DNA of 64,000 nt from Dendrobates tinctorius. Its lineage: Eukaryota. The position numbers and the translations under genes are program-made. Every line of letters starts with the position of its first letter. Position 1 is the stretch's first letter. Location of the stretch: positions 992,001-1,056,000 of the forward strand of contig NW_027362015.1 in assembly GCF_039654945.1 (NCBI RefSeq), in the 5' to 3' direction. Positions 15,881-64,000 of this stretch are shown piece by piece. Under the pieces are notes generated by a model. The model saw only the letters and a list, made by a program, of their open reading frames with translations. It had not been told where the DNA came from and made no database searches.

Positions 15881-16129
15881 ATCCGTCACACTGTAATTAC
15901 ACACATCCATTTATTATGATACATTGGAGGTGTTTATTATTGTATAAGGTGAGTAGATAAATTAGATGATTAATATATTTATGTTCTTAAAATTATGATA
16001 TTCTGTTCTTGTTGATTGGAATAGTTTTACCAATGAGGAGATCCATCAATCAGTTCAGTGATGCACAAATGCCGGTTGCGCACATGCTGGCTACACTAAA
16101 GCAAAAATAACTCCTAGCATCCCCACAAG

Positions 16130-21125: not shown

Positions 21126-21246
21126 TATTAGCGATGGGGCCGCCGCTGATCATTCCCCCCTATACACAGTGTATTAGCGATGGGGCCGCCGCTGATCATT
21201 CCCCCCTAGACACACCATATTAGCGATGGGGCCGCCGCTGATCATT

Positions 21247-24200
21247 AAACTAGAACAACATGGGAAGGGAAGCAAAAGACCAGAAAAAGCCATACACCTG
21301 ACAAATGCTATTGAGAACTCTGCTATTAGAAGTGGAAAGGAAGAACAAAGACGAAAGAATCTAATTAATAAAAATATTGGAGAAAGAGAAACCAATCACA
21401 AACTAAAATGTTTCCATACTAATGCACAAAGCATGGGCAACAAAGAAGGAGAATTGGAACTACTAACACAGGAAAAGAAATATGATGTCATTGGAATCAC
21501 TGAGACTTGGTGGGACAATACACATGATTGGAATACAAGACTAGAAGGATACAACTTATTTGCAAGAAACAGACTTGATAAACGAGGAGGGGGTGTCGCA
21601 TTGTATGTTAGAAACGCGTATATCTGCACAGAGATTGAAGCTTCAGAGACTGGGAGTTCTGTGGAAACTGTTTGGGTAAGAATACAAGGACAGAACAATG
21701 GAAAGGACACCATTGTAGGCATTTACTACAGGCCGCCTGTGCAAGCTGAAGCTATGGATGAACTCTTTATGCATCAAATGGCCAAGTTCTCCAAAAAATA
21801 TGACATAGTTGTCATGGGAGATTTCAACTATCCAGACATTTGTTGGGAACCTCTCTCAGGCAAAACTAACAGGTCAAGGAAATTCTTATCCTCTCTTGCT
21901 GACAACTTTATCTTCCAAAAGGTAAGGGAGAAAACAAGGGGAACTGCTACTTTGGATCTAATCCTTATAAACAGGGAGGAAATGGTTGAGGAGGTAAAAG
22001 TGGCTGGGACCCTAGGAGGTAGCGACCATGCTATTTTAGAATTTTGGATAACTAGAGGCGGAAGACCTGTGAAGACTCAGACGTCAAGGTTAGATTTCAG
22101 AAAGGCAGATTTTAAGGGATTCAGAAAGAGAATTGGAGGGATCCAATGGCTGGATATCCTTAAAGACAAAAATGTCCAGGAAGGATGGGAAATCTTGAAA
22201 AATGAAATTCTCAAAGCACAGTTGTTAACAATTCCGAAAAGAGGGAAGAATAGGAAGCAGTTAAGGAAACCAGGATGGATGAACACAGAACTTAAGCACA
22301 TGCTAAAAAGGAAGAAAAAAATGTTTATAAAATGGAAAGAGGGAGGCATATCTAAAGAAGAATATAATGCTGTCTGCAGAACCTGCAGGGCACAAATCAG
22401 ATTATCTAAAGCTGAAAATGAATTGAGGCTTGCAAGAGATGTCAAAAGCAATAATAAAGGATTTTGGGGATATGTCAAAAGTAAAAGAAAAGTCAAAGAT
22501 GCCATAGGATTTTTACAGGATGAAAATGATGAAATGGTAAGACAGGATGTTGAGAAGGCTGAACTTTTAAATTCCTATTTTGCATCTGTTTTCTCTCAGA
22601 AAGGAAATGTAACATCAACTGTTATTCACTGTCCTATTAAGGGAATAGAAGAATCCAGGATATCTATAAACAGAAAGATAGTGAGGAAACACTTAGCTAG
22701 CCTAAATGAATTCAAGTCTCCAGGTCCAGATGAATTACACCCCAGAGTACTGAAGGAGATAGCAGAAGAAATTTTTGAACCCCTCTCTATAATCTTTGAA
22801 AATTCTTGGAGAACTGGAGAAGTGCCAGAAGACTGGAGAAGAGCAAATGTTGTTCCTATCTTCAAAAAGGGGAAGAAGGTGGACCCAGGTAACTATAGGC
22901 CGGTGAGTCTGACTTCTATACCAGGAAAGATCTTTGAACAAATTATTAAACAACATGTATGTCAATACCTGGATAAGAATGAAGTGATTAAACAGAGTCA
23001 GCATGGGTTTGTAACTAATAAGTCATGTCAGACTAACTTAATTTCCTTCTATGACGGTATCACTGATTGGGTGGATCAAGGAAATGCTGTAGATATAGTA
23101 TATCTTGACTTCAGCAAAGCATTTGACAAAGTCTCTCATACAATCCTTATTGAAAAAATGATTAAGTATGGAATGGACAAGGCAACTGTTAGGTGGATTC
23201 ATAACTGGCTTAGTGATCGGACCCAAAGAGTGGTCGTAAATGGCTGCACATCCAGTTGGAAGAATGTCTCAAGTGGGGTACCACAGGGCTCTGTCCTGGG
23301 CCCTGTATTGTTCAACATCTTTATCAACGATTTAGATGAAGGAATTGAGGGTAAACTGATTAAATTTGCTGATGACACAAAGCTAGGAGGGATAGCTAAT
23401 ACTAGAGAAGAGAGAGAGAGAATTCAAAAAGATTTAAATAAACTGGAGAAGTGGGCAGCAACTAACAGAATGGTTTTTAACAGGGAGAAATGCAAAGTAC
23501 TACATCTGGGCAATAAAAATGGAAAAGGCATATATAGAATGGGAGGAATAGGGCTAAGTGACAGCACATGTGAAAAAGACTTGGGTATACTAATAGATCA
23601 CAGACTGAATATGAGTCAACAGTGTGATGCAGCAGCAAAAAAGGCAAATGCAATTCTAGGATGTATTAACAGAAGCATACAGTCTAGATCACGTGAAGTC
23701 ATTATTTCCCTCTACTCATATTTGGTCAGACCTCATCTGGAATATTGTGTCCAGTTTTGGGCACCACATTTTAAAAAAGACATCAACAAACTGGAGCAAG
23801 TTCAGAAAAGAGCGACCAGAATGGTGACCGGTCTGCAAACCCTGTCTTATGAGGAAAGGTTGCAGGATTTGGGAATGTTTAGTTTGCAAAAGAGAAGACT
23901 GAGAGGAGACTTAATAGCTGTCTACAAATATCTAAAGGGCTGTCACATTGTAGAAGGATCAACTTTATTCTCATTTGCACAAGGAAAGACTAGAAGCAAT
24001 GGGATGAAACTGAATGGGAGGAGACACAGATTAGATATTAGAAAAAACTTTTTGACAGTTAGAGTGATCAATGAGTGGAACAGGCTGCCACGAGAAGTGG
24101 TGAGTTCTCCTTCAATGGAAGTCTTCAAACAGAGGCTGGACAGACATCTGACTGGGATGATTTAGCGAATCCTGCTTTGAGCAGGGGGTTGGACCAGATG

Positions 24201-24253
24201 GCCCAGGAGGTCCCTTCCAACTCTACGATTCTATGATCCTATGATTCTATGAT
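21247..24253 (+). mobile_element. CR1 LINE, 5'-truncated, with intact ORF2 (APE endonuclease + RT)
   Basis: Uninterrupted ORF to 24165 with [32 protein letters not shown] and FADD motifs. 8-bp-repeat tail; TCATT duplicated at 21242-21246 and 24254-24258. Confidence 0.95.
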
Positions 24254-26689
24254 TCATTCCCCCCTAGACACACCATATTAGCGATGGGGCCGCCGCTGAT
24301 CATTCCCCCCTAGACACACCATATTAGCGATGGGGCCGCCGCTGATCATTCCCCCCCCCCCCCGGATACACCATATTAGCGATGGGGCTGCCACTGATCA
24401 TCCCCCCTAGATACATTGTATTAACGATGGGGCCGCCGCTGTCATTCCCCCCCCCCCCCCCCTTAGATACACCACATTAGCGATGGGGCCGCCGGTGATC
24501 ATTCCCCCCTAGATACATTGTATTAGCGATGGGGCCGCCACTGATCATCCCCCCTAGATACATTGTATTAGCGATGGGGCCGCCACTGATCATCCCCCCT
24601 AGATACATTGTATTAGCGATGGGGCCGCCACTGATCATCCCCCCTAGATACATTGTATTGGCGATGGGGCCGCCACTGATCATCCCCCCTAGGTACATTG
24701 TATTGGCGATGGGGCCGCCGCTGATCATCCCCCCCAGATACATTGTATTAGCGATGGGGCCGCCGCTGATCATTCCCCCCTAGACACACCGTATTAGAGA
24801 TGGGGCCGCCGCTGATCATTCCCCCCTAGACACACCATATTAGAGATGGGGCCGCCGCTGATCATTCCCCCCTAGACACACCATATTAGCGATGGGGGCG
24901 CCGCTGATCATTCCCCCTAGACACACCATATTAGCGATGGGGGCGCCGCTGATCATTCCCCCTAGACACACCATATTAGCGATGGGGCTGCCGCTGATCA
25001 TTCCCCCTAGACACCATATTAGCGATGGGGCCACCGCTGATCATACCCCCTAGACACACCATATTAGCGATGGGGCCGCCGCTGATCATTCCCCCCCCCC
25101 CCCGGATACACCATATTAGCGATGGGGCTGCCACTGATCATCCCCCCTAGATACATTGTATTAGCGATGGGGCTGCCACTTATCATCCCCCCCTAGATAC
25201 ATTGTATTAACGATGGGGCCGCCGCTGTCATTCCCCCCCCCCCCCTAGATACACCATATTAGCGATGGGGCTGCCACTGATCATCCCCCCTAGATACATT
25301 GTATTAGCGATGGGGCCGCCACTGATCATTCCCCCCTAGATACATTGTATTAGCGATGGGGCCGCCACTGATCATCCCCCCTAGATACACCATATTAGCG
25401 ATGGGGCCGCCGGTGATCATTCCCCCCTAGATACATTGTATTAGCAATGGGGCCGCCACTGATCATTCCCCCCTAGATACATTGTATTGGCGATGGGGCC
25501 GCCACTGATCATCCCCCCTAGATACATTGTATTGGCGATGGGGCCGCCGCTGATCATCCCCCCCAGATACTTTGTATTAGCGATGGGGCTGCCACTGATC
25601 ATCCCCCCTAGATACATTGTATTAGCGATGGGGCCGCCGCTGATCATTCCCCCTAGATACATTGTATTAGCGATGGGGCCGCCGCTGATCATCCCCCCCA
25701 GATGCATTGTATTAGCGATGGGGCCGCCGCTGATCATCCCCCCCAGATACATTGTATTAGCGATGGGGCCGCCGCTGATCATCCCCCCCAGATACATTGT
25801 ACTAGCGATGGGGCCGCTGCTGATCATTTCCCCCCCAGATACATTGTATTAGCGATGGTGCCGCCGCTGATCATCCCCCCCTAGATACATTGTATTAGCG
25901 ATGGGGCTGCCACTGATCATCCCCCCTAGATACATTGTATTAGCGATGGGGCTGCCACTTATCATCCCCCCCCTAGATACATTGTATTAACGATGGGGCC
26001 GCCGCTGTCATTCCCCCCCCCCCCTTAGATACACCATATTAGCGATGGGGCCGCCGGTGATCATTCCCCCTAGATACATTGTATTAGCGATGGGGCCGCC
26101 ACTGATCATCCCCCCTAGATACATTGTATTAGCGATGGGGCCGCCACTGATCATCCCCCCTAGATACATTGTATTGGCGATGGGGCCGCCGCTGATCATC
26201 CCCCCCAGATACATTGTATTAGCGATGGGGCCGCCGCTGATCATCCCCCCCAGATGCATTGTATTAGCGATGGGGCCGCCGCTGATCATCCCCACCCAGA
26301 TACATTGTATTAGCGATGGGGCCGCCGCTGATCATCCCCCCCAGATACATTGTACTAGCGATGGGGCCGCTGCTGATCATTTCCCCCCCAGATACATTGT
26401 ATTAGCGATGGGGCTGCCACTGATCATCCCCCCCCCCCCCTTCGATACACCATATTAGCGATGGAGCTGCCACTGATCATCCCCCCCTAGATACATTGTA
26501 TGAGCAGTGGGGCTGCCACTGATCATTACCTCCTTCGTATGCCATACAAGTGATAGAGGCGCCGCTGATCTCCCTATACATGCTTTTTCTATTGATGGGA
26601 TGTACTTTCATGCTACCTATCGTGATGATGTAGGTATCGGGATCGGGGGGCATCGCTTGACTCTTCCTCACTTATTGCCTTTCTTTTAG

Positions 26690-40743: not shown

Positions 40744-40923
40744 TAAGAAGTGTGGCTGCTTGGAGTTGGTATCCTGTTTACAAACGCTGATCACAAAGTC
40801 GGGGAATATTGCCCTGCACCGCACAATCTGTTGAGCCTGACCTCACACAATGCACTGATCTCCACTGACATGCATCCTGCAGCTTTAGGTGTGACTGGAT
40901 GATAAGACTTCAGGATACAGGAA

Positions 40924-43900
40924 TATAGTATATACCCAGGAGGACAGTGAGGAGGAGCGGACACTTCTAGTCCTGTCCTGTACTGATGTATATAGTATAT
41001 ACCCAGGAGGACGGTGAGGAGGAGCGGACACTTCTAGTCCTGTCCTGTAGTGATGTATACAGTATATACCCAGGAGGACGGTGAGGAGGAGCGGACACTT
41101 CTAGTCCTGTCCTGTACTGATGTATATAGTATATACCCAGGAGGATGGTGAGGAGGAGCGGACACTTCTAGTCCTGTCCTGTAGTGATGTATATAGTATA
41201 TACCCAGGAGGAAGGTGAGCAGGAGCGGACACTTCTAGTCCTGTAGTGATGTATATAGTATATACCCAGGAGGACGGTGAGGAGGAGCGGACACTTCTAG
41301 TCCTGTCCTGTACTGATGTATATAGTATATACCCAGGAGGACGGTGAGGAGGAGCGGACACTTCTAGTCCTGTCCTGTAGTGATGTATACAGTATATACC
41401 CAGGAGGATGGTGAGGAGGAGCGGACACTTCTAGTCCTGTCCTGTACTGATGTATATAGTATATACCCAGGAGGATGGTGAGGAGGAGCGGACACTTCTA
41501 GTCCTGTCCTGTAGTGATGTATACAGTATATACCCAGGAGGATGGTGAGGAGGAGCGGACACTTCTAGTCCTGTCCTGTAGTGATGTATACAGTATATAC
41601 CCAGGAGGACGGTGAGGAGGAGCGGACACTTCTAGTCCTGTCCTGTACTGATGTATATAGTATATACCCAGGAGGATGGTGAGGAGGAGCGGACACTTCT
41701 AGTCCTGTCCTGTAGTGATGTGTATAGTATATACCCAGGAGGATGGTGAGGAGGAGCGGACACTTCTAGTCCTGTCCTGTAGTGATGTATATAGTATATA
41801 CCCAGGAGGACGGTGAGGAGGAGCGGACACTTCTAGTCCTGTCCTGTAGTGATGTATATAGTATATACCCAGGAGGACGGTGAGGAGGAGCGGACACTTC
41901 TAGTCCTGTCCTGTACTGATGTATATAGTATATACCCAGGAGGACGGTGAGGAGGAGCGGACACTTCTAGTCCTGTCCTGTACTGATGTATATAGTATAT
42001 ACCCAGGAGGACGGTGAGGAGGAGCGGACACTTCTAGTCCTGTCCTGTAGTGATGTATATAGTATATACCCAGGAGGACGGTGAGGAGGAGCGGACACTT
42101 CTAGTCCTGTCCTGTAGTGATGTATATAGTATATACCCAGGAGGACGGTGAGGAGGAGCGGACACTTCTAGTCCTGTCCTGTAGTGATGTATATAGTATA
42201 TACCCAGGAGGACGGTGAGGAGGAGCGGACACTTCTAGTCCTGTCCTGTAGTGATGTATATACCCAGGAGGACGGTGAGGAGGAGCGGACACTTCTAGTC
42301 CTGTAGTGATGTATACAGTATATACCCAGGAGGACGGTGAGGAGGAGCGGACACTTCTAGTCCTGTCCTGTCCTGTAGTGATGTATATAGTATATACCCA
42401 GGAGGACGGTGAGGAGGAGCGGACACTTCTAGTCCTGTCCTGTAGTGATGTATATAGTATATACCCAGGAGGACGGTGAGGAGGAGCGGACACTTCTAGT
42501 CCTGTCCTGTAGTGATGTATATAGTATATACCCAGGAGGACGGTGAGGAGGAGCGGACACTTCTAGTCCTGTCCTGTAGTGATGTATATAGTATATACCC
42601 AGGAGGACGGTGAGGAGGAGCGGACACTTCTAGTCCTGTCCTGTAGTGATGTATATAGTATATACCCAGGAGGACGGTGAGGAGGAGCGGACACTTCTAG
42701 TCCTGTCCTGTAGTGATGTATATAGTATATACCCAGGAGGACGGTGAGGAGGAGCGGACACTTCTAGTCCTGTCCTGTAGTGATGTATATAGTATATACC
42801 CAGGAGGATGGTGAGGAGGAGCGGACACTTCTAGTCCTGTCCTGTAGTGATGTATATAGTATATACCCAGGAGGACTGTGAGGAGGAGCGGACACTTCTA
42901 GTCCTGTCCTGTAGTGATGTATATACCCAGGAGGACGGTGAGGAGGAGCGGACACTTCTAGTCCTGTCCTGTAGTGATGTATATAGTATATACCCAGGAG
43001 GACGGTGAGGAGGAGCGGACACTTCTAGTCCTGTAGTGATGTATACAGTATATACCCAGGAGGACGGTGAGGAGGAGCGGACACTTCTATTCCTGTCCTG
43101 TAGTGATGTATATAGTATATACCCAGGAGGTCTGTGAGGAGGGCGGACACTTCTAGTCCTGCCCTGTACTGATGTATATAGTATATACCCAGGAGGATGG
43201 TGAGGAGGAGCGGACACTTCTAGTCCTGTCCTGTAGTGATGTATATAGTATATACCCAGGAGGACGGTGAGGAGGAGCGGACACTTCTAGTCCTGTCCTG
43301 TAGTGATGTATATACCCAGGAGGACGGTGAGGAGGAGCGGACACTTCTAGTCCTGTCCTGTAGTGATGTATATAGTATATACCCAGGAGGACGGTGAGGA
43401 GGGCGGACACTTCTAGTCCTGCCCTGTACTGATGTATATAGTATATACCCAGGAGGACGGTGAGGAGGAGTGGACACTTCTAGTCCTGTCCTGTAGTAAT
43501 GTATATAGTATATACCCAGGAGGACGGTGAGGAGGAGCGGACACTTCTAGCCCTATCCTGTAGTGATGTATATACCCAGGAGGACGGTGAGGAGGAGCGG
43601 ACACTTCTAGTCCTGTCCTGTACTGATGTATATAGTATATACCCAGGAGGATGGTGAGGAGGAGCGGACACTTCTAGTCCTGTCCTGTAGTGATGTATAT
43701 AGTATATACCCAGGAGGATGGTGAGGAGGAGCGGACACTTCTAGTCCTGTAGTGATGTATATAGTATATACCCAGGAGGACGGTGAGGAGGAGCGGACAC
43801 TTCTAGTCCTGTCCTGTAGTGATGTATATAGTATATACCCAGGAGGACTGTGAGGAGGAGCGGACACTTCTAGTCCTGTCCTGTAGTGATGTATATAGTA

Positions 43901-45008
43901 TATACCCAGGAGGACGGTGAGGAGGAGTGGACACTTCTAGTCCTGTCCTGTAGTGATGTATATAGTATATACCCAGGAGGACGGTGAGGAGGAGCGGACA
44001 CTTCTAGTCCTGTAGTGATGTATACAGTATATACCCAGGAGGATGGTGAGGAGGAGCGGACACTTCTAGTCCTGTCCTGTAGTGATGTATATAGTATATA
44101 CCCAGGAGGATGGTGAGGAGGAGCGGACACTTCTAGCCCTATCCTGTAGTGATGTATATAGTATATACCCAGGAGGACGGTGAGGAGGAGCGGACACTTC
44201 TAGTCCTGTCCTGTAGTGATGTATATAGTATATACCCAGGAGGACGGTGAGGAGGAGCGGACACTTCTAGTCCTGTCCTGTAGTGATGTATATAGTATAT
44301 ACCCAGGAGGACGGTGAGGAGGAGCGGACACTTCTAGTCCTGTCCTGTAGTAATGTATATAGTATATACCCAGAAGGATGGTGAGGAGGAGCGGACACTT
44401 CTAGCCCTATCCTGTAGTGATGTATATAGTATATACCCAGGAGGACGGTGAGGAGGAGCGGACACTTCTAGTCCTGTCCTGTAGTGATGTATATAGTATA
44501 TACCCAGGAGGACGGTGAGGAGGAGCGGACACTTCTAGTCCTGTCCTGTAGTGATGTATATAGTATATACCCAGGAGGACGGTGAGGAAGAGCGGACACT
44601 TCTAGTCCTGTTCTGTAGTAATGTATATAGTATATACCCAGGAGGACGGTGAGGAGGAGCGGACACTTCTAGTCCTGTTATGTAGTGATGTATATAGTAT
44701 ATACCCAGGAGGATGGTGAGGAGGAGCGGTCACTTCTAGTCCTGTCCTGTAGTGATGTATATAGTATATACCCAGGAGGACAGTGAGGAGGAGCGGTCAC
44801 TTCTAGTCCTGTCCTGTAGTGATGTATATAGTATATACCCAGGAGGACGGTGAGGAGGAGCGGACACTTCTAGTCCTGTTATGTAGTGATGTATATAGTA
44901 TATACCCAGGAGGATGGTGAGGAGGAGCGGTCACTTCTAGTCCTGTCCTGTAGTGATGTATATAGTATATACCCAGGAGGACAGTGAGGAGGAGCGGACA
45001 CTTCTAGT
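40924..45008 (+). repeat. 67-bp satellite array, ~60 copies (left arm of a large inverted repeat)
   Basis: Unit TATAGTATATACCCAGGAGGACGGTGAGGAGGAGCGGACACTTCTAGTCCTGTCCTGTAGTGATGTA. Confidence 0.97.
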
Positions 45009-45020
45009 CATTCTAGGGTA

Positions 45021-47655: not shown

Positions 47656-47720
47656 GGCGGGGAGAGAGACACCCCAAAAGACTGCAGCATAGAAAGGGGG
47701 TAGAGACAGACCCCAAAAGA

Positions 47721-50700
47721 CTATATACTTCACTACAGGACAGGACTAGAAGTGTCTGCTCCTCCTCACCATCCACCTGGGTATATACTATATACATCAC
47801 TACAGGACAGGACTAGAAGCGTCCGCTCCTCCTCACCATCCTCCTGGGTATATACTATATACATCACTACAGGACAGGACTAGAAGCGTTTGCTCCTCCT
47901 CACCATCCACCTGGGTATATACTATATACATCACTACAGGACAGGACTAGAAGTGTCCGCTCCTCCTCACCATCCTCCTGGGTATATACTATATACATCA
48001 CTACAGGACAGGACTAGAAGTGTCCGCTCCTCCTCACCGTCCTCCTGGGTATATACTATATACATCACTACAGGACAGGACTAGAAGTGTCCGCTCCTCC
48101 TCACCATCCTCCTGGGTATATACTATATACATCACTACAGGACAGGACTAGAAGTGTCCGCTCCTCCTCACCGTCCACCTGGGTATATACTATATACATC
48201 ACTACAGGACAGGACTAGAAGTGTCCGCTCATCCTCACCGTCCTCCTGGGTATATACTATATACATCACTACAGGACAGGACTAGAAGTGTCCGCTCCTC
48301 CTCACCGTCCTCCTGGGTATATACTGTATACATCACTACAGGACAGGACTAGAAGTGTCCGCTCCTCCTCACCGTCCTCCTGGGTATATACTATATACAT
48401 CACGACAGGACTAGAAGTGTCTGCTCCTCCTCACCATCCACCTGGGTATATACTATATACATCACTACAGGACAGGACTAGAAGTGTCCGCTCCTCCTCA
48501 CCATCCACCTGGGTATATACTATATACATCACTACAGGACAGGACTAGAAGTGTCCGCTCATCCTCACCGTCCTCCTGGGTATATACTATATACATCACT
48601 ACAGGACAGGACTAGAAGTGTCCGCTCCTCCTCACCATCCACCTGGGTATATACTATATACATCACTACAGGACAGGACTAGAAGTGTCCGCTCCTCCTC
48701 ACCATCCTCCTGGGTATATACTATATACATCACTACAGGACAGGACTAGAAGTGTCCGTTCCTCCTCACCGTCCTCCTGGGTATATACTATATACATCAC
48801 TACAGGACAGGACTAGAAGTGTCTGCTCCTCCTCACCGTCCACCTGGGTATATACTATATACATCACTACAGGACAGGACTAGAAGTGTCCGCTCCTCCT
48901 CACCGTCCACCTGGGTATATACTATATACATCACTACAGGACAGGACTAGAAGTGTCCGCTCATCCTCACCGTCCTCCTGGGTATATACTATATACATCA
49001 CTACAGGACAGGACTAGAAGTGTCCGCTCCTCCTCACCGTCCTCCTGGGTATATACTATATACACATCACTACAGGACAGGACTAGAAGTGTCCGCTCCT
49101 CCTCACCGTCCTCCTGGGTATATACTATATACATCACTACATGACAGGACTAGAAGTGTCCGCTCCTCCTCACCGTCCTCCTGGGTATATACTATATACA
49201 TCACTACAGGACAGGACTAGAAGTGTCCGCTCCTCCTCACCGTCCTCCTGGGTATATACTATATACATCACTACAGGACAGGACTAGAAGTGTCCGCTCC
49301 TGCTCACCGTCCTCCTATGTATATACTATATACATCACTACAGGACTAGAAGTGTCCGCTCCTGCTCACCATCCTCCTGGGTATATACTATATACATCAC
49401 TACATGACAGGACTAGAAGTGTCCGCTCCTCCTCACCGTCCTCCTGGGTATATACTATATACATCACTACAGGACAGGGCTAGAAGTGTCCGCTCCTCCT
49501 CACCGTCCTCCTGGGTATATACTATATACATCACTACATGACAGGACTAGAAGTGTCCGCTCCTCCTCACCGTCCTCCTGGGTATATACTATATACATCA
49601 CTACAGGACAGGGCTAGAAGTGTCCGCTCCTCCTCACCGTCCTCCTGGGTATATACTATATACATCACTACAGGACAGGACTAGAAGTGTCCGCTCCTCC
49701 TCACCATCCTCCTGGGTATATACTATATACATCAGTACAGGACAGGACTAGAAGTGTCCACTCCTCCTCACCATCCTCCTGGGTATATACTATATACATC
49801 AGTACAGGACAGGACTAGAAGTGTCCGCTCCTCCTCACCGTCCTCCTGGGTATATACTATATACACATCACTACAGGACAGGACTAGAAGTGTCCGCTCC
49901 TCCTCACCATCCTCCTGGGTATATACTATATACATCAGTACAGGACAGGACTAGAAGTGTCCGCTCCTCCTCACCGTCCTCCTGGGTATATACTATATAC
50001 ACATCACTACAGGACAGGACTAGAAGTGTCCGCTCCTCCTCACCGTCCTCCTGGGTATATACTATATACATCACTACATGACAGGACTAGAAGTGTCCGC
50101 TCCTCCTCACCGTCCTCCTGGGTATATACTATATACATCACTACAGGAAAGGACTAGAAGTGTCCGCTCCTCCTCACCGTCCTCCTGGGTATATACTATA
50201 TACATCACTACAGGACAGGACTAGAAGTGTCCGCTCCTCCTCACCGTCCTCCTGGGTATATACTATATACATCACTACAGGACTAGAAGTGTCCGCTCCT
50301 GCTCACCATCCTCCTGGGTATATACTATATACATCACTACATGACAGGACTAGAAGTGTCCGCTCCTCCTCACCGTCCTCCTGGGTATATACTATATACA
50401 TCACTACAGGACAGGACTAGAAGTGTCCGCTCCTCCTCACCGTCTTCCTGGGTATATACTGCACACATCACTACAGGACAGGACTAGAAGTGTCCGCTCC
50501 TCCTCACCGTCCTCCTGGGTATATACTATATACATCACTACGGGACAGGACTAGAAGTGTCCGCTCCTCCTCACCGTCCTCCTGGGTATATACTATATAC
50601 ATCACTACAGGACAGGGCTAGAAGTGTCCGCTCCTCCTCACCGTCCTCCTGGGTATATACTGCACACATCACTACAGGACAGGACTAGAAGTGTCCGCTC

Positions 50701-52720
50701 CTCCTCACCGTCCTCCTGGGTATATACTATATACATCACTACATGACAGGACTAGAAGTGTCCGCTCCTCCTCACCGTCCTCCTGGGTATATACTATATA
50801 CATCACTACAGGACAGGACTAGAAGTGTCCGCTCCTCCTCACCGTCTTCCTGGGTATATACTGCACACATCACTACAGGACAGGACTAGAAGTGTCCGCT
50901 CCTCCTCACCGTCCTCCTGGGTATATACTATATACATCACTACGGGACAGGACTAGAAGTGTCCGCTCCTCCTCACCGTCCTCCTGGGTATATACTATAT
51001 ACATCACTACAGGACAGGGCTAGAAGTGTCCGCTCCTCCTCACCGTCCTCCTGGGTATATACTGCACACATCACTACAGGACAGGACTAGAAGTGTCCGC
51101 TCCTCCTCACCGTCCTCCTGGGTATATACTATATACATCACTACGGGACAGGACTAGAAGTGTCCGCTCCTCCTCACCATCCTCCTGGGTATAAACTATA
51201 TACATCAGTACAGGACAGGACTAGAAGTGTCCGCTCCTCCTCACCGTCCTCCTGGGTATATACTATATACATCACTACAGGACAGGACTAGAAGTGTCCG
51301 CTCCTCCTCACCGTCCTCTTGGGTATATACTGTATACATCACTACAGGACTGGACTAGAAGTGTTCGCTCCTCCTCACCGTCCTCCTGGGTATATACTAT
51401 ATACATCACTACAGGACAGGACTAGAAGTGTCCGCTCCTCCTCACCGTCCTCTTGGGTATATACTATATACATCACTACAGGACTGGACTAGAAGTGTTC
51501 GCTCCTCCTCACCGTCCTCCTGGGTATATACTATATACATCACTACAGGCAGGACTAGAAGTGTCCGCTCCTCCTCACCGTCCTCCTGGGTATATACTAT
51601 ATACATCACTACAGGACAGGAATAGAAGTGTCCGCTCCTCCTCACCGTCCTCCTGGGTATATACTATATACATCACTACAGGACAGGACTAGAAGTGTCC
51701 GCTCCTCCTCACCGTCCTCCTGGGTATATACTGTATACATCACTACAGGACAGGACTAGAAGTGTCCGCTCCTCCTCACCGTCCTCCTGGGTATATACTA
51801 TATACATCACTACAGGACAGGACTAGAAGTGTCCGCTCCTCCTCACCGTCCTCCTGGGTATATACTATATATATCACTACAGGACAGGACTAGAAGTGTC
51901 CGCTCCTCCTCACCATCCTCCTGGGTATAAACTATATACATCAGTACAGGACAGGACTAGAAGTGTCCGCTCCTCCTCACCGTCCTCCTGGGTATATACT
52001 ATATACATCACTACAGGACAGGACTAGAAGTGTCCGCTCCTCCTCACCGTCCTCTTGGGTATATACTGTATACATCACTACAGGACTGGACTAGAAGTGT
52101 TCGCTCCTCCTCACCGTCCTCCTGGGTATATACTATATACATCACTACAGGACAGGACTAGAAGTGTCCGCTCCTCCTCACCGTCCTCCTGGGTATATAC
52201 TATATACATCACTACAGGACAGGACTAGAAGTGTCCGCTCCTCCTCACCGTCCTCCTGGGTATATACTATATACATCACTACAGGACAGGACTAGAAGTG
52301 TCCGCTCCTCCTCACCGTCCTCCTGGGTATATACTGTATACATCACTACAGGACAGGACTAGAAGTGTCCGCTCCTCCTCACCGTCCTCCTGGGTATATA
52401 CTATATACATCACTACAGGACAGGACTAGAAGTGTCCGCTCCTCCTCACCGTCCTCCTGTGTTTATACTGTATACATCACGACAGGACTAGAAGTGTCCG
52501 CTCCTCCTCACCATCCTCCTGGGTATATACTGTATACATCACTACAGGACAGGACTAGAAGTGTCCGCTCCTCCTCACCGTCCTCCTGGGTATATACTAT
52601 ATACATCATTACAGGACAGGACTAGAAGTGTCCGCTCCTCCTCACCGTCCTCTTGGGTATATACTATATACATCACTACAGGACAGGACTAGAAGTGTCC
52701 GCTCCTCCTCACCATCCACC
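47721..52720 (-). repeat. 67-bp satellite array, ~75 copies, reverse complement of 40924-45008 (right arm)
   Basis: Unit TACATCACTACAGGACAGGACTAGAAGTGTCCGCTCCTCCTCACCGTCCTCCTGGGTATATACTATA. Confidence 0.97.
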
Positions 52721-58544: not shown

Positions 58545-60110
58545 CACAACTTTCCCAATGGTTGGTCATATCTTCCTGCCCCCAATCTCCCCAGTGGTTG
58601 GTGCAGGTTTACTGCCCCTCAACCTTCCCAGTGGTTGGTGCAGTCTTTCTGCCACATCCTCCATCCCCCTCTCCCACCTCAGTCTTCCCAGTGGTTGGTC
58701 CATCCCCCCTCCCACACCTTCCATCCCTCCTCAGTCTCCCCAGTGGTTGGTGCAGTCTTCCTTCCATCCCTCCTCAGTCTCCCCTGTGGTTGATGCAGTC
58801 TTCCTGCCACACCCTCCATCCCCCCTCCCACCCCAGTCTCCCCAGTGGGGTTGGTGTAGTCTTCCTGCCACACCTTCCATCCCCCCTCAGTCTCCCCAGT
58901 GGTTAGTGCAGTCTTCCTGCCTCACCCTCCATCCCCCCTCCCACCTCAGTCTCCCCAGTGGTTGGTGCAGTCTTCCTGCCACACCCTCCATCCTCCCTCC
59001 CACCTCAGTCTCCCCTGTGGTTGATGCAGTCTTCCTGCCACACCCTCCATCCCCCTCCCACCTCAGTCTCCCCAGTGGTTGGTGCAGTCTTCCTGCCACT
59101 CCCTCCATCCTCCCTCCCACCTCAGCCTCCCCAGTGGTTGGTGCAGTCTTCCTGCCACTCCCTCCATCCCCCTCCCACCTCAGTCTCCCCAGTGGTTGGT
59201 GCAATCCTCCTGCCACTCCCTCCATCCCTCTCCCACCAGTCTCCCCAGTGGTTGGTGCAGTCTTCCTGCCACACCCTCCATCCTCCCTCCCACCTCAGTC
59301 TCCCCTGTGGTTGATGCAGTCTTCCTGCCACTCCCTCCATCCCCCTCCCACCTCAGTCTCCCCAGTGGTTGGTGCAATCTTCCTGCCATTCCCTCCATCC
59401 CTCTCCCACCTCAGTCTCCCCAGTGGTTGGTGCAGTCTTTCTGCCATTCCCTCCATCCCTCTCCCACCTCAGTCTCCCCAGTGGTTGGTGCAGTCTTTCT
59501 GCCACACCCTCCATCCCCCCTCCCACCTCAGTCTCCCCAGTGGTTGGTGCAGTTTTCCTGCCACTCCCTCCATCCTCCCTCCCACCTCAGTCTCCCCTGT
59601 GGTTGGTGCAGTCTTCCTGCCACTCCCTCCATCCTCCCTCCCACCTCAGTCTCCCCTGTGGTTGGTGCAGTCTTCCTGCCACTCCCTCCATCCTCCCTCC
59701 CACCTAAGTCTCCCCTGTGGTTGATGCAGTCTTCCTGCCACTCCCTCCATCCCCCTCCCACCTCAGTCTCCCCAGTGGTTGGTGCAATCTTCCTGCCATT
59801 CCCTCCATCCCTCTCCCACCTCAGTCTCCCCAGTGGTTGGTGCAGTCTTCCTGCCACACCCTCCATCCCCCCTCCCACCTCAGTCTCCCCAGTGGTTGGT
59901 GCAGTCTTCCTGCCACACCCTCCATCCCCCCTCCCACCTCAGTCTCCCCAGTGGTTGGTGCAGTCTTCCTGCCACACCCTCCATCCTCCCTCCCACCTCA
60001 GTCTCCCCTGTGGTTGATGCAGTCTTCCTGCCACACCTTCCATCCCTCCTCAGTCTCCCCAGTGGTTGGTGTAGTCTTCCTGCCCCCTCCCTCCACCAGT
60101 AGTTGGTGCA
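58545..60110. repeat. ~58-bp minisatellite in BOP1 intron 5
   Basis: Unit CAGTCTCCCCAGTGGTTGGTGCAGTCTTCCTGCCACACCCTCCATCCCCCCTCCCACCT. Confidence 0.93.
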
Positions 60111-60468
60111 GTTTCTCCTTAGCTAGTTATTAATGCAACCACCGTCCTCTCCCCAGTACTCAGAGCAGTCCACCTTCTTCCCCAGTAGTGAGAAGCCTCG
60201 CGTTGGTATTTGGTGTGGCTGCTGTGCTCCATTGATGGGTGATATTACAGCCCAGCTCCCTGACACCCCACAGACGAGGCTAATTTCTGGCCCTTGTTCC
60301 ACCACTTGGTCACATAGAACCCCCTGTAACCCCTCCGTCCTTGAGGATGGCACAAGCCTCTTCTAGTGATAATTTGGTTTATCCTCCAATGAACCCACCT
60401 GTGCTGGCAGGCAGACTCTGCCATGTATGGTGCTTGCCGGTCTGATGAGCTCTGATCTTTTTCTGCAG

Positions 60469-60570
60469 CCATCAGTGGATTTCTTCACACATGAGACCAT
60501 GATCCATCCCATCACCAACCGACCGGCGGACAAGAGAAGCTTCATTCCTTCCCTCATTGAGAAGGAGAAG
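60469..60570 (+). CDS. BOP1: BOP1 exon 6 ([34 protein letters not shown])
   Basis: Canonical splice sites; conserved KRSFIPS motif. Confidence 0.96.
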
Positions 60571-60675
60571 GTAACAACATTTTGGCTGCTGGCAAGGGTG
60601 TGATCGGCCACATAACGGCAGCAGCTGATGCTGCTGCGGAACCTCCTCAGCGATCACATCTGTTGCTGTTTTTAG

Positions 60676-60888
60676 GTTTCTAAGTTGGTTCATGCCATTA
60701 AGATGGGCTGGATCCGTCCGCGGAAGCCTCGAGATGACACCCCTAGTTACTATGACTTGTGGGCTCAAGAGGATCCGAATGCCATACTAGGGAGGCACAA
60801 AATGCACGTTCCTGCTCCACGGCTGCCACTGCCAGGACACGAAGAATCGTACAACCCCCCTCCAGAGTACCTGATGACCGAGGAGGAG
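60676..60888 (+). CDS. BOP1: BOP1 exon 7 ([13 protein letters not shown]...[19 protein letters not shown])
   Basis: Conserved [15 protein letters not shown] motif; AG/GT boundaries. Confidence 0.97.
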
Positions 60889-60964
60889 GTGCGACATCTA
60901 TGTCTGTGAATCACCTGCTCTGTGTGTGAGGCATCATGTCCAACATCTCCTACATCCTCTGTAG

Positions 60965-61126
60965 AAATTGGCCTGGGAGCAGCAGGATGCCGAAGACCGA
61001 AAGTTGCCGTTCCTTCCCAAGCAGCACCTTTCCCTGCGCTCCGTGCCCGCATATGCCCGCTTCATACACGAGAGGTTTGAGCGCTGCCTGGACCTGTACC
61101 TGTGTCCTCGCCAGAGGAAGATGAGG
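60965..61126 (+). CDS. BOP1: BOP1 exon 8 (KLAWEQQD...[19 protein letters not shown])
   Basis: Hallmark [11 protein letters not shown] motif of Bop1/Erb1. Confidence 0.97.
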
Positions 61127-61196
61127 GTAAGCGATCACCAGACGAGCGCGCTGCACTTCATGGAACGGCCGCCTCATCTGTGCTTATATCACACAG

Positions 61197-61277
61197 GTCA
61201 ACGTGGATCCCGAGGATCTGATCCCCAAACTACCCAAACCCCGTGACCTTCAGCCGTTCCCTACCACACAGTCCATG
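61197..61277 (+). CDS. BOP1: BOP1 exon 9 ([27 protein letters not shown])
   Basis: Conserved LIPKLPxPxDLxPFP; CAG/GTGAGT boundaries. Confidence 0.97.
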
Positions 61278-61378
61278 GTGAGTGTAACTTCTGGCCGTTC
61301 CCCGGATTCTGCCGGTCCTGGTCCATCTGTCCCTTCTACCCCTCCGCTGATCGCTCTCCTTTCTGTTGCTCGCGTCAG

Positions 61379-61448
61379 ATTTATCGTGGTCACACATCCC
61401 TTGTGCGCTGTGTCAGTGTCTCTCCCTCCGGTCAGTGGATTGTCTCAG
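61379..61448 (+). CDS. BOP1: BOP1 exon 10 ([23 protein letters not shown]), first WD40 repeat
   Basis: GH WD40 start; CAG/GTACGT boundaries; ends in phase 1. Confidence 0.95.
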
Positions 61449-61809
61449 GTACGTGGATTCACAATCAGATGTTTTACGTTATTTCTGTGTTATGTCCTCC
61501 GCTGTCATCTGTGGAGCCGACACTGATTTATGGAAGGATGTAAAGATCTGCCATTCACATGTCTTGGAGACCTGGCTCGGAGGACGACGATTGCTCCACC
61601 ACTGAGATTTTGCCATCAGATAGTTTTTGTCTTCTGGATTATCACAATTTTTTGCCCAGCCGGTGCCAGACTAATGCAAGATTACTCTAATTCAGCCTTC
61701 TTAACCTGAGCACACTTGAACCTCAGAGGCCCCAAGGACAATATGTGGTCTACAGAACCCTGGTAAGTCACGTCACTAGCCAAGAGGATAACCTCACTGC
61801 TCTTCTTAG

Positions 61810-61942
61810 GATCTGATGACTCATCACTCAAGTTTTGGGAAATTTGTACCGGTCGTTGCATGAAAACAATTAATCTAGACGGGGCCATCAAAAGTGTGAG
61901 CTGGAACCCGAACTCCTCACTGGTGCTGGTGGCTGCATGTGT
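61810..61942 (+). CDS. BOP1: BOP1 exon 11 ([19 protein letters not shown]...[14 protein letters not shown])
   Basis: WD40 GSDD..W motif; TAG/GTGAGT boundaries. Confidence 0.95.
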
Positions 61943-61951
61943 GTGAGTATT

Positions 61952-62151
61952 CTGTATTATACTCCAGAGCTGCACTCACTATTCTGCTGGTGCAGTCACT
62001 GTGTACATACATTACTGATCCTGAGTTACCTCCTGTATTATACTCCAGAGCTGCACTCACTATTCTGCTGGTGCAGTCACTGTGTACATACATTACTGAT
62101 CCTGAGATATATCCTGTATTACACTCCAGAGCTGCACTCACTATTCTGCTG
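61952..62151. repeat. 81-bp tandem repeat (~2.5 copies) filling BOP1 intron 11
   Basis: ACTCCAGAGCTGCACTCACTATTCTGCTG recurs at 61961, 62042 and 62123. Confidence 0.9.
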
Positions 62152-62165
62152 ATTGTTTTGCTCAG

Positions 62166-62346
62166 GGAGACCTCCGTTGTCATTGTGAACCCCGGCCTTG
62201 GAGACCGTCTTCTGTGCAGTTCCACTGATCAGCATTTAGAGGGGTATGAGGCACCGGAGGAGCAGAAGCAGCAGCCAGTGACCTGGGCGACCGCAGAGGG
62301 GGCAGATTATGACCAAGGACTTCGGCTCCGGCTTCTCCATGAGAAG
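62166..62346 (+). CDS. BOP1: BOP1 exon 12 (ETSVVIVNPGLGDRLLCS...LRLLHEK)
   Basis: NPGLGDRLL motif; frame consistent. Confidence 0.95.
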
Positions 62347-62419
62347 GTAGACCTTTCCATGACCAGCGCTGTTTGCTGTGGCCTCTGCTGCTTTTCACAC
62401 TTGGCTTCTACTCCCACAG

Positions 62420-62708
62420 GCAGTGAAGCAAGTCACGTGGCACGGGCGTGGGGATTATTTTGCAGTGGTCCTTCCAGATAATGGGAATTCTCAAGTCTTT
62501 ATTCATCAGCTCAGCCGCAGACGCAGCCAAAACCCTTTCCGCAAAAACAAAGGCCAAGTCCAGCGCGTCCAGTTCCACCCCACTCGCCCCTTCTTCTTTG
62601 TGGCCACACAGCGATACATCAGGGTCTACAATCTGCTGAAACAGGAGCTGACCAAGAAGCTACTCGCTAACTGCAAGTGGATCTCCAGCCTCGCTATCCA
62701 CCCTGCAG
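62420..62708 (+). CDS. BOP1: BOP1 exon 13 ([14 protein letters not shown]...SSLAIHPA)
   Basis: WD40 repeats including [14 protein letters not shown]; donor GTTAGC at 62709. Confidence 0.97.
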
Positions 62709-63964
62709 GTTAGCGGAGAATGATGGAGGCGCTACACTGCTGCAGTGTAAGCGGTGGTGGGTCACTCCAGGGGATGAGGTCAGAGCATTCACGTCTCACT
62801 CTGCAGGTGAGCGGAGAATGATGGGGGTACTACTCTGCTGCAGTGCAAGCGGTGGTGGGTCTCTCCAGGGGATGAAGTCAGAGCAGTCACTTCTCACCCT
62901 GCGGGTGAGCGGAGAATAATGGGGGTGCTACACTGCTGCAGTGTAAGCGGTGGTGGGTCTCTCCAGGGGATGAAGTCAGAGCAGTCACTTCTCACCCTGC
63001 AGGTGAGCGGAGAATGATGGGGGTGCTACACTGCTGCAGTGTAAGCGGTGGTGGATCTCTCCAGGGGATGAAGTCAGAGCAGTCACTTCTCACCCTGCAG
63101 GTGAGCGGAGAATGATGGGGGTGCTACACTGCTGCAGTGTAAGCAGTGGTGGGTCTCTCCAGGGGATGAAGTCAGAGCAGTCACTTCTCACCCTGCAGGT
63201 GAGTGGAGATGAAAGGGAGAGGGTTAAATTAACCCTTCACGGTTGAACCAGTGATGTCCAAATTATTCCACAGAGTGTTGCTAGCAACTCAAATGTCCAC
63301 ACGGAGACGGGGGATCGAGACAGATAACTAGTCCCCTTTATTTTAGTCACTTCTTTTATAATGTTTTGCTTAATTATGCAAAGTTCTCAACTACCAATAG
63401 CATCATTTCACTTTATAAGCCAATAATATTGCAAGAAAACCGGAAACTACATATATGTTTGTATCCAAATAGCATAGAAAGCAATATAATGGCATATTCT
63501 TCAGAGTTCTACACCCCCGGTTCCCTTATCTTGCACCTGATGAGAACAGTCTGGTTTCGTGACAGCCCATCCCAATTACAAAAATGTATCTTACAGCAAC
63601 AAAAATGGAGAAACGAAACCTTCAGAGAATGGATAAAACGAAACTTCAGCTTTGATTTTAGTTTTAACCCTTCACAGAGAATGATGGGGTTAATACTCTG
63701 CTGCAGTGTAAGCAGTGGTGGGTCTCTCCAGGGGATGAGGTCAGTGCAGTCACTTCTCACCCTGCAAGGTGAGCGGAGAATGATGGGGGTACTACTCTGC
63801 TGCAGTGTAAGCAGTGGTGGGTCTCTCCAGGGGATGAGGTCAGAGCAGTCTCTTCTCACCCTGCAGGTGAGTGGAGAATGATGGGGGTACTATGCTGCAG
63901 TGTAAGCGGTGGTGGGTCTCTCCAGGGGATGAGGTCAGAGGAGTCACTTCTCATGTCTTTCCAG
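62699..63964 (+). repeat. 98-bp tandem repeat x8 forming BOP1 intron 13
   Basis: Units start with GT at 62709, 62807, 62905, 63003, 63101, 63199, 63769 and 63867. Confidence 0.95.
63210..63676 (-). mobile_element. Solo LTR (467 bp)
   Basis: TG...CA ends with short inverted repeats (TGAAAGGG / CCCTTCACA); 4-bp TSD GAGA (63206-63209, 63677-63680). Minus-strand TATAAAA (63360-63354) precedes AATAAA (63342-63337). Confidence 0.8.
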
Positions 63965-64000
63965 GTGATAATCTGATCTATGGAAGTTATGATTCCAAGT
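63965..64000 (+). CDS. BOP1: BOP1 exon 14, partial (GDNLIYGSYDSK), truncated by window end
   Basis: TCTTTCCAG acceptor; continues HPA-GDNL..GSYD in frame. Confidence 0.92.

What the first reader, a model, noticed from the sequence alone, without database searches (positions are those of the whole stretch)
62699..63964. BOP1 intron 13 is a tandem array of complete mini-introns joined by AG|GT junctions (candidate recursive splice-site array)
Seen: the 98-bp unit is the last 10 nt of exon 13 (CACCCTGCAG) plus the start of the intron. Internal junctions therefore read CACTTCTCACCCTGCAG|GTGAG(C/T): a pyrimidine-rich acceptor directly abutting a near-consensus donor. Six of the seven internal junctions keep AG|GT (62806/7, 63002/3, 63100/1, 63198/9, 63768/9, 63866/7); one is GG|GT (62904/5). 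The internal donors (GTGAG) fit consensus better than the authentic one (GTTAGC). Only the last unit has the real acceptor. Known: AG|GT sites are the signature of recursive splicing and zero-length exons. Inference: the intron may be removed stepwise in 98-nt units. Alternatively, retention of units (98 is not a multiple of 3) would frameshift an essential gene, so copy number could tune BOP1 output. It is a snapshot of splice-site multiplication by tandem duplication.
Basis: partly seen in the sequence, partly recalled or inferred. Interest (0 to 1): 0.72.

Follow-up and report, generated by a model that had tools for sequence, protein, structure and literature searches.

The report
Splice-junction minisatellite in frog BOP1 intron
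One intron of the ribosome-assembly gene BOP1 is filled by eight tandem 98-base copies of its own exon/intron junction. The assembled mRNAs still join the first splice donor to the last acceptor, so this is a real but already known kind of intronic repeat with no sign of a new function.

Summary
A 98-bp unit made of the last 10 nt of a BOP1 exon plus the first 88 nt of its intron is repeated eight times across 62699-63953, and unit 6 is split by a 467-bp high-copy insertion. Six of the seven internal joints read AG|GT and one reads GG|GT. Internal donors pair better with U1 (-9.6 to -13.3 kcal/mol) than the authentic GTTAGC donor (-7.1).

Spliced contigs from two runs (X5, X11) show a single joint across the array, 62708 to 63965. 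A loose end in a third run (X6) reads the same junction. That is the first donor joined to the last acceptor. No contig retains units, and intron-level signal is like that of a neighbouring intron.

All runs were assembled contigs, so stepwise (recursive) removal, which gives the same mRNA, is feasible but untested. Tuning of output by unit retention has no support.

The class is known: minisatellites whose first monomer spans an exon/intron border occur in human F7, IFI6, CBS, LMNB2 (100-bp unit) and PDGFA (81-bp unit) (PMC1557585). This scan had already noted the same thing in other genes of this genome (ROGDI, GALNT16, MRPL37, SURF2, perlecan).

The one twist here is that the unit is intron-sized and also carries an acceptor.

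Verdict: new member of a known kind, most likely a tolerated by-product of a minisatellite-prone region.

The parts
62420..62708 (+).
   Evidence: phmmer against PDB, E 1e-46 to human BOP1. Both exon borders are given by spliced RNA contigs X5 record 14 and X11 record 9.
62709..62714 (+). Authentic 5' splice site, CAG|GTTAGC. This is the donor used in assembled mRNA. The T at +3 also makes an in-frame TAG (62711-62713).
   Evidence: Joint 62705->62962(+3), which equals 62708->63965, with GT..AG ends in X5 and X11. U1 duplex -7.1 kcal/mol, 7 of 9 consensus matches. Translation reads IHPAG*.
62699..63209 (+). Array block 1: units 1-5 plus the first 21 nt of unit 6 (98-bp period)
   Evidence: TRF score 910, 5.2 copies, 94% matches; unit alignment.
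62804..62812 (+). Internal joint 1, CAG|GTGAGC (acceptor-like plus donor-like)
   Evidence: DNA contig X1 record 3 and RNA-run contig X5 record 15 cross it unspliced.
62902..62910 (+). Internal joint 2, CGG|GTGAGC (donor intact, acceptor AG lost)
63000..63008 (+). Internal joint 3, CAG|GTGAGC
   Evidence: X1 record 4 and X6 record 20 cross it.
63098..63106 (+). Internal joint 4, CAG|GTGAGC
63196..63204 (+). Internal joint 5, CAG|GTGAGT (9 of 9 consensus donor)
   Evidence: U1 duplex -13.3 kcal/mol.
63210..63676 (.). 467-bp insertion of a high-copy dispersed repeat inside unit 6, flanked by a GAGA duplication (63206-63209 and 63677-63680)
   Evidence: Sequence. DNA contig depth is about 13,000-18,000 against 3.6 for unique flanks. 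No inverted terminal repeats; a 12-nt direct repeat TTAACCCTTCAC lies near both ends.
63677..63953 (+). Array block 2: the rest of unit 6, then units 7 and 8
   Evidence: TRF score 475, 2.8 copies, 93% matches.
63766..63774 (+). Internal joint 6, AAG|GTGAGC (one inserted A)
   Evidence: contigs X1 record 6, X6 record 22 and X11 record 10 cross it.
63864..63872 (+). Internal joint 7, CAG|GTGAGT (9 of 9 consensus donor, 98 nt upstream of the true acceptor)
   Evidence: contigs X1 record 7, X6 record 23 and X11 record 11 cross it.
63942..63964 (+). Non-repeated 3' end of the ancestral intron: pyrimidine tract and true acceptor ...CTTCTCATGTCTTTCCAG|
   Evidence: RNA joint; 15 of 20 pyrimidines, branch-like TCAC with its A at -19.
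63965..64000 (+). Start of the next BOP1 exon (G)DNLIYGSYDSK; runs off the window
   Evidence: Direct reading; RNA joint; the same residues follow in relatives P0008 and P0014.

Best explanation
This is a locally born intronic minisatellite. An ancestral short intron of about 100 nt suffered a tandem duplication of a 98-bp segment. That segment ran from 10 nt before the 5' splice site to about 11 nt before the 3' splice site, with the breakpoint at a 2-nt CA microhomology. Unequal exchange then amplified the segment to eight units, and a dispersed repeat later landed in unit 6. Each unit starts with the exon end plus the donor and ends in the pyrimidine-rich tail of the intron, so every joint reads YAG|GTRAGY. 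The mature mRNA is made from the first donor and the last acceptor (shown). The internal sites are either ignored, as in the human junction minisatellites where the most upstream donor wins, or used now and then. Occasional use would do no harm, because removing any run of units from any internal donor to any internal acceptor recreates the same joint and leaves a substrate that can still reach the canonical mRNA (inferred). The array is a tolerated by-product of a very minisatellite-prone region and is not a regulator of BOP1.
For: Array and joints. The unit is specific to this locus: DNA contig depth over the array is 5.6-12 against 3.6 for unique flanks, whereas the insertion is at about 18,000. 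The last unit keeps a non-repeated 3' end, and units 3-5 differ by only 2 nt while unit 1 differs by 9-12. Seven RNA-confirmed neighbouring BOP1 introns measure 105, 76, 70, 101, 361, 223 and 73 nt. In two other animals the intron at this same position can be read through in frame and works out at 81 and 87 nt. A roughly 100-nt ancestor therefore fits. The only joint across the array in spliced contigs of X5 (depth 30.5) and X11 (49.4) is 62708->63965, and an X6 loose end at 63962 reads the exon end. In X6, exon bins are at 2,600-37,900 and array bins at 0-29, much like the 361-nt intron at 11. The window holds 84 TRF rows. The same genome has junction minisatellites in at least five other genes (unchecked notes). 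Human precedents exist in which only the first donor is used, including a 100-bp unit in LMNB2 and an 81-bp unit in PDGFA (PMC1557585).
Against: The authentic donor is the weakest of the eight (U1 duplex -7.1 against -9.6 to -13.3 kcal/mol). Two internal donors are CAG|GTGAGT, the one sequence that did compete with the first donor in F7 minigenes, at 70-90% use. Complete silence of the internal sites is therefore not a safe assumption. Contigs drop rare variants and cannot show intermediates, so the path to the mRNA is not shown. The orthologous intron of a close relative was not obtained, so the ancestral single-unit state and the direction of the G/T change at +3 are inferred. Copy number could not be checked with 31-mer contigs.
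Confidence: 0.65

Rival explanations
1. The intron is removed in several steps in a sizeable share of transcripts. As each 98-nt unit is transcribed it is spliced out as a mini-intron, or a strong internal donor pairs first with the true acceptor and the remainder is removed afterwards. Each step regenerates CAG|GT, and the end product is the canonical mRNA.
For: All the needed parts are present. Internal donors are stronger than the authentic one and than most of the 7 neighbouring real donors. Internal acceptors have 13-14 of 20 pyrimidines, within the 13-16 range of real acceptors of the same gene, and carry the same TCAC branch-like motif as the true 3' end, with the A at -16 against -19. 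The unit length of 98 nt lies within the 70-105 nt of neighbouring spliced introns. Recursive splicing has been reported in small human introns too (PMC10156609). The canonical-only mRNA is equally compatible with this path.
Against: No intermediate was seen, although contigs could hardly show one. In human junction minisatellites the first donor is chosen directly. For human introns under 1 kb, conventional lariats outnumber recursive ones. Joint 2 has lost its AG. There is no sign of selection keeping the joints.
Confidence: 0.3
2. The array tunes BOP1 output. Some transcripts keep one or more 98-nt units, are frameshifted or stopped, and are degraded, so copy number sets the dose.
For: 98 is not a multiple of 3. 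A retained intron gives GGT TAG at once. The strong internal donors could in principle be used with the true acceptor.
Against: No contig in three RNA-type runs carries an internal donor joined to 63965. Array depth is like that of another intron and is 100- to 1000-fold below exon depth in X6. Depth per contig is a rough measure, and decay of faulty mRNA could hide part of such products.
Confidence: 0.05
3. The downstream donor copies act as U1-binding sites that help recognition of the weak first donor (GTTAGC), so the array compensates for that weak site.
For: The first donor is weak and the seven copies downstream are strong. Downstream U1 binding that favours an upstream site is described in the splicing literature (my own knowledge, not checked here).
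Against: No test was done here. [quoted passage not shown] Neighbouring BOP1 donors that are equally weak (-5.4 to -6.5 kcal/mol) work without any array.
Confidence: 0.08
4. The array is an assembly artefact.
For: Repeats are prone to mis-assembly, and the copy number was not verified. The best DNA run may come from the same sample as the assembly.
Against: Contigs from four studies match unit-to-unit joints together with their own distinguishing letters, with 0-2 differing letters each: X1 records 2-8, X5 record 15, X6 records 20, 22 and 23, X11 records 10 and 11.
Confidence: 0.03

Closest known systems
[quoted passage not shown]
   Same: An intron-sized monomer whose first copy spans the exon/intron border. 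The array fills most of the intron, and only the authentic, most upstream donor is seen in mRNA.
   Different: A different gene and lineage, with fewer copies (8). Here the authentic donor has drifted to a weaker sequence than its copies, and a dispersed repeat has been inserted. I could not check whether the human monomers also end in a usable acceptor, because the original papers are not held in the library.
Human F7 IVS7 37-bp VNTR; also the IFI6 (6-16) and CBS IVS13 junction minisatellites (PMC1557585)
   Same: The first monomer spans the exon/intron boundary, so the donor is reiterated. In F7 the pseudo-sites are functional but silent, and the first site is selected.
   Different: In F7 the 37-bp unit is too short to be an intron by itself, so stepwise removal of single units is not possible there; the unit sizes of IFI6 and CBS were not checked here. 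In F7 the copies are identical to the authentic site, whereas here the copies are stronger. Two of them are CAG|GTGAGT, which competed in F7 minigenes.
Recursive splice sites (Drosophila ratchet points; vertebrate RS sites)
   Same: A juxtaposed pyrimidine tract, AG|GT and a donor consensus, so splicing to the site would regenerate a 5' splice site.
   Different: Known sites lie mostly in very long introns, are often conserved, and are defined by observed intermediates, lariats or saw-tooth read profiles. None of these is shown here, and the host intron is only 1.26 kb.
Intron gain by tandem duplication of an AG|GT proto-splice site (Rogers model, discussed in PMC2891723; Zhuo et al. 2007 PNAS, cited but not read)
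   Same: Tandem duplication copies an AG|GT site so that the stretch between two copies has intron borders.
   Different: No new intron position was created. The duplication sits at the edge of an existing, conserved intron and only lengthened it.

Membership tests
Exon/intron-junction minisatellite (F7 / LMNB2 / PDGFA / CBS / IFI6 type) | Tandem array lying in an intron | tested here: met
   TRF period 98, 5.2 + 2.8 copies; intron borders from RNA contigs.
Exon/intron-junction minisatellite (F7 / LMNB2 / PDGFA / CBS / IFI6 type) | First monomer spans the exon/intron boundary, so the donor site is reiterated downstream | tested here: met
   The unit starts at 62699, 10 nt inside the exon. There are seven further GT(G)AG copies.
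Exon/intron-junction minisatellite (F7 / LMNB2 / PDGFA / CBS / IFI6 type) | mRNA made from the most upstream donor (alone, or with the next one or two) | tested here: met
   The only joint across the array is 62708->63965 in X5 and X11, and an X6 loose end agrees. These are contigs, so rare isoforms are not excluded.
Exon/intron-junction minisatellite (F7 / LMNB2 / PDGFA / CBS / IFI6 type) | Copy number varies between individuals (VNTR) | not testable with these tools
   Only 31-mer contigs were available, and none spans the array.
Recursive splice site | Pyrimidine tract + AG directly followed by a GTRAGT-like donor | tested here: met
   Six of seven internal joints.
Recursive splice site | Observed intermediates: upstream exon joined to the site, lariats ending at the site, or a saw-tooth nascent RNA profile | not testable with these tools
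   All runs offered were assembled contigs. No such joint was listed, but near-identical units would hide it.
Recursive splice site | Site kept by selection / conserved in relatives | tested here: inconclusive
   Change rate in signal columns is 6 of 156 against 14 of 432 elsewhere; counts are too few, and no close relative's intron was obtained.
[quoted passage not shown] | A new intron appears at a position that was previously uninterrupted coding sequence | tested here: not met
   Relatives' genomic reading frames lose homology exactly after HP(A/G)G. Two read through an 81- or 87-nt intron and resume at DN(V/I)ICGSYDSK, so the intron position is old.

The most novel reading that the evidence does not exclude
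The array is in fact taken out unit by unit in vivo. That would make it a natural run of up to seven recursive or nested splicing steps within a 1.26-kb vertebrate intron. Self-regenerating joints would make strong decoy donors harmless, and this would explain how an essential gene tolerates a first donor weaker than all of its copies.
Probability: 0.3. Interest if true: 0.55.

Novelty: new member of a known kind. Interest (0 to 1): 0.3.

Why it matters
On its own this is one more junction minisatellite, a kind known from human genes and seen repeatedly in this frog genome. Its use is as a natural experiment. A weak authentic donor is followed by seven stronger copies, two of them perfect consensus, and each sits behind a usable-looking acceptor at ordinary intron spacing. 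It therefore sets 'the first donor wins' against 'stepwise, self-correcting removal' in one short intron of an essential gene. Taken with the other cases in this genome, it also shows how a minisatellite-prone genome multiplies splice signals without visible damage to the mRNA.

Tried and rejected
1. Hairpin masking of the internal donors. Each internal joint can fold CUCACC/GGUGAG around the AG (45-nt local folds of -11 to -17 kcal/mol). However, the local-folding accessibility of the 9-nt donor does not separate the authentic site (0.006) from the internal ones (0.002-0.08) or from the seven real neighbouring donors (0.00003-0.04). Rejected.

2. A hidden RNA gene in the unit, such as a snoRNA in a ribosome-biogenesis host gene. 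There was no Rfam match at E<=1 over 60100-64000, and the unit fold is ordinary (z -0.44). Rejected.

3. Selection on the joints. No difference in change rate was found, but the counts are too small to decide.

4. The orthologous intron in close relatives. The word search with the exon peptide found nothing above 80% identity in the permitted length range, so only distant relatives could be compared.

5. A dispersed satellite or transposon as the source of the unit. DNA depth over the array is only about 2-3 times the unique level. Rejected.

6. Zhuo et al. 2007 (PMC1783408) is not held in the library.

Full report
**What is there.** Reading 62400-64000 and running Tandem Repeats Finder confirm a 98-bp period. 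There are 5.2 copies at 62699-63209 (94% matches) and 2.8 copies at 63677-63953 (93%). A 36-mer from the unit occurs 8 times with at most one mismatch, and nowhere else in the 64-kb window, against 0 expected by shuffling. The two blocks are one array of eight units. Unit 6 is split by a 467-bp insertion (63210-63676) flanked by a GAGA duplication.

Every junction coordinate in the finding is correct:
- CAG|GT at 62806/7, 63002/3, 63100/1, 63198/9 and 63866/7.
- CAAG|GT at 63768/9, with one inserted A.
- CGG|GT at 62904/5.

**Gene and transcripts.** The exon 62420-62708 translates without stops. It matches human BOP1 residues 537-631 at E 1e-46, and yeast Erb1 at about 1e-31. Pfam gives only weak WD40 beta-propeller hits. 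The exon number 13 was not verified.

All 24 public runs offered were Logan contigs, none of them raw reads. I laid four runs on 60100-64000. X5 and X11 carry long spliced contigs (1,378 and 2,715 nt) that confirm seven neighbouring introns of 105, 76, 70, 101, 361, 223 and 73 nt. Across the array they show one joint, which skips 1,256 nt with GT..AG ends, from 62708 to 63965. X6 has a loose end at 63962 that reads the end of the exon, which is the same junction. So the mature mRNA uses the first donor (CAG|GTTAGC) and the last acceptor. No joint from an internal donor to 63965 and no unit-sized skip was listed.

**Is the array real?** Contigs from four studies match individual unit-to-unit joints together with their distinguishing letters, with 0-2 differing letters each. 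These are X1 records 2-8 (DNA), X5 record 15, X6 records 20, 22 and 23, and X11 records 10 and 11. None spans the array, so the count of eight units rests on the assembly. DNA depth over the array (5.6-12) is only about 2-3 times that of unique flanks (3.6). The unit is therefore specific to this locus. The insertion, at 13,000-18,000, is a dispersed high-copy repeat.

**Origin.** The unit shares exactly 10 nt with the exon end (CACCCTGCAG). The last unit shares the body of the unit up to ...CACTTCTCA and then continues with a non-repeated TGTCTTTCCAG. The two homologies overlap in CA. This is what one tandem duplication would produce if the 98-bp segment ran from -10 of the donor to about -11 of the acceptor of an intron of roughly 100 nt, followed by amplification.
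- Units 3-5 differ by 2 nt, which suggests recent copies.
- Unit 1 differs from the others by 9-12 nt.
- Variants are shared in a mosaic pattern, as expected from unequal exchange.

A short ancestor fits the neighbouring introns. It also fits distant relatives. In genomic reading frames from other animals, homology stops exactly after HP(A/G)G. Two of them (P0008, P0014) read through in frame and resume at DN(V/I)ICGSYDSK, which works out at introns of 81 and 87 nt. Several of those frames continue with G-E, that is GGT GAG, so a donor starting GTGAG is common at this position. This hints that the T at +3 of the frog's first donor is derived, but these species are too distant to settle the point.

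The whole window is packed with minisatellites, with 84 TRF rows. Earlier notes of this scan report the same kind of junction array in at least five other genes of this genome. Those notes call the organism a poison frog, which I did not verify.

**Quality of the internal sites.**
- Predicted pairing with the 5' end of U1 is -7.1 kcal/mol for the authentic donor.
- It is -11.1 for CAG|GTGAGC (three joints), -10.4 and -9.6 for the two altered joints, and -13.3 for the two CAG|GTGAGT joints.
- Seven RNA-confirmed donors of the same gene range from -5.4 to -11.1.
- Internal acceptors have 13-14 pyrimidines among the 20 bases at -23 to -4, and a TCAC with its A at -16. The true acceptor has 15 of 20, with the A at -19. 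Neighbouring real acceptors have 13-16 of 20.

So six of the seven internal joints have what a 98-nt intron needs. The joints are copies of a single ancestral site, however, and their change rate is no lower than that of the rest of the unit (6 of 156 against 14 of 432 cells). Their presence therefore says nothing about function.

**What the RNA says about function.** In X6, exon bins have contig depths of 2,600-37,900, array bins 0-29, and the 361-nt intron 11. In X5 and X11, array contigs are at about 3-9 against 30-49 for exons. Contig depth is a crude measure, but nothing suggests that units are retained. A retained intron would stop translation at once, since it reads GGT TAG. The idea that copy number tunes BOP1 output has no support.

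Stepwise removal cannot be judged from these data. Removing any stretch from an internal donor to an internal acceptor recreates ...CACCCTGCAG|GT..., so every route ends in the same mRNA. Short contigs of near-identical units cannot reveal the intermediates.

**Most likely working.** I take the array to be a tolerated by-product. The first donor is chosen, as in the human precedents, or internal sites are used occasionally and the products remain substrates that can still be resolved to the canonical mRNA.

The precedents are laid out in Borensztajn et al. 2006 (PMC1557585). Minisatellites whose first monomer spans an exon/intron boundary occur in several human genes:
- F7 IVS7 (37 bp).
- The 6-16/IFI6 gene.
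- CBS IVS13.
- LMNB2, with a 100-bp monomer in 10-15 copies, where only the authentic donor is used.
- PDGFA, with an 81-bp monomer in 16-18 copies.

In F7 minigenes the most upstream functional donor is selected even against better pseudo-sites. Only a perfect CAG/gtgagt competes, at 70-90% use. The frog array has that very sequence twice (63198/9 and 63866/7), 490 and 1,158 nt downstream of the first donor, yet the assembled mRNA is canonical. Either distance protects the first donor, or products made from those sites are spliced again. This is the one open point of interest. Recursive splicing has been reported in small human introns, although conventional lariats dominate below 1 kb (PMC10156609). 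I put about 0.3 on a sizeable share of multi-step removal.

**Things that led nowhere.**
- A hairpin at each joint does not make internal donors less accessible than real ones.
- There is no Rfam family in the region, and the unit fold is ordinary.
- The exon peptide found no relative above 80% identity in the permitted length range, so the orthologous intron of a close frog was not obtained.

**Verdict.** This is a new member of a known kind, with the modest twist that the unit is intron-sized and carries both splice signals.

Noticed in passing
window 61934-62195 (81-bp repeat, 2.5 copies at 61952-62151, in the preceding BOP1 intron): This element is extremely abundant. Summed contig depth is about 1.27 million in the DNA run against 3.6 for the flanks, and it is also very high in the RNA-type runs. 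It looks like a very high-copy dispersed or satellite repeat of this genome.
   Followed up: no
window 63210-63676: A 467-bp high-copy insertion lies in unit 6, with a GAGA flanking duplication. It has no terminal inverted repeats, and a 12-nt direct repeat TTAACCCTTCAC sits near both ends. Some RNA-run contigs carry a 165-nt internal deletion variant, 63403->63569. The family was not identified.
   Followed up: partly
window 1-60100: The window is unusually dense in minisatellites (84 TRF rows). Examples are 34 bp x111 at 6025-9804, 46 bp x115 at 10585-15879, 45 bp arrays at 17227-26526, and two 67-bp arrays in opposite orientation at 40923-45009 and 47720-52717. The last pair was already noted in this scan as s1-362346.
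   Followed up: no
window 58767-60084: A 59-bp pyrimidine-rich array (22.7 copies) lies in the BOP1 intron upstream of the exon that starts at 60467. Each unit contains CCCCAG and GTGCAG, so it carries many acceptor-like motifs. RNA contigs use the acceptor at 60467.
   Followed up: no
window 62711-62713: The G-to-T difference at +3 that weakens the authentic donor (GTTAGC against GTGAGC in the copies) also creates an in-frame TAG two codons into the intron. Any transcript that keeps the intron therefore stops at once. This may be coincidence.
   Followed up: partly
window 10551-15878: The 46/51-bp array unit contains GTGAGCGGAG, the same 10-mer as the start of the BOP1 unit's intron part. The rest of the two units does not look alike by eye. 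Probably chance.
   Followed up: no
runs X17-X20 (organism B): RNA-type runs of a second species label hold about a fifth of the sampled words of 62300-64000, roughly the share of the exon. A close relative with a near-identical exon therefore exists in public data and could serve for an intron comparison if DNA runs are available.
   Followed up: no
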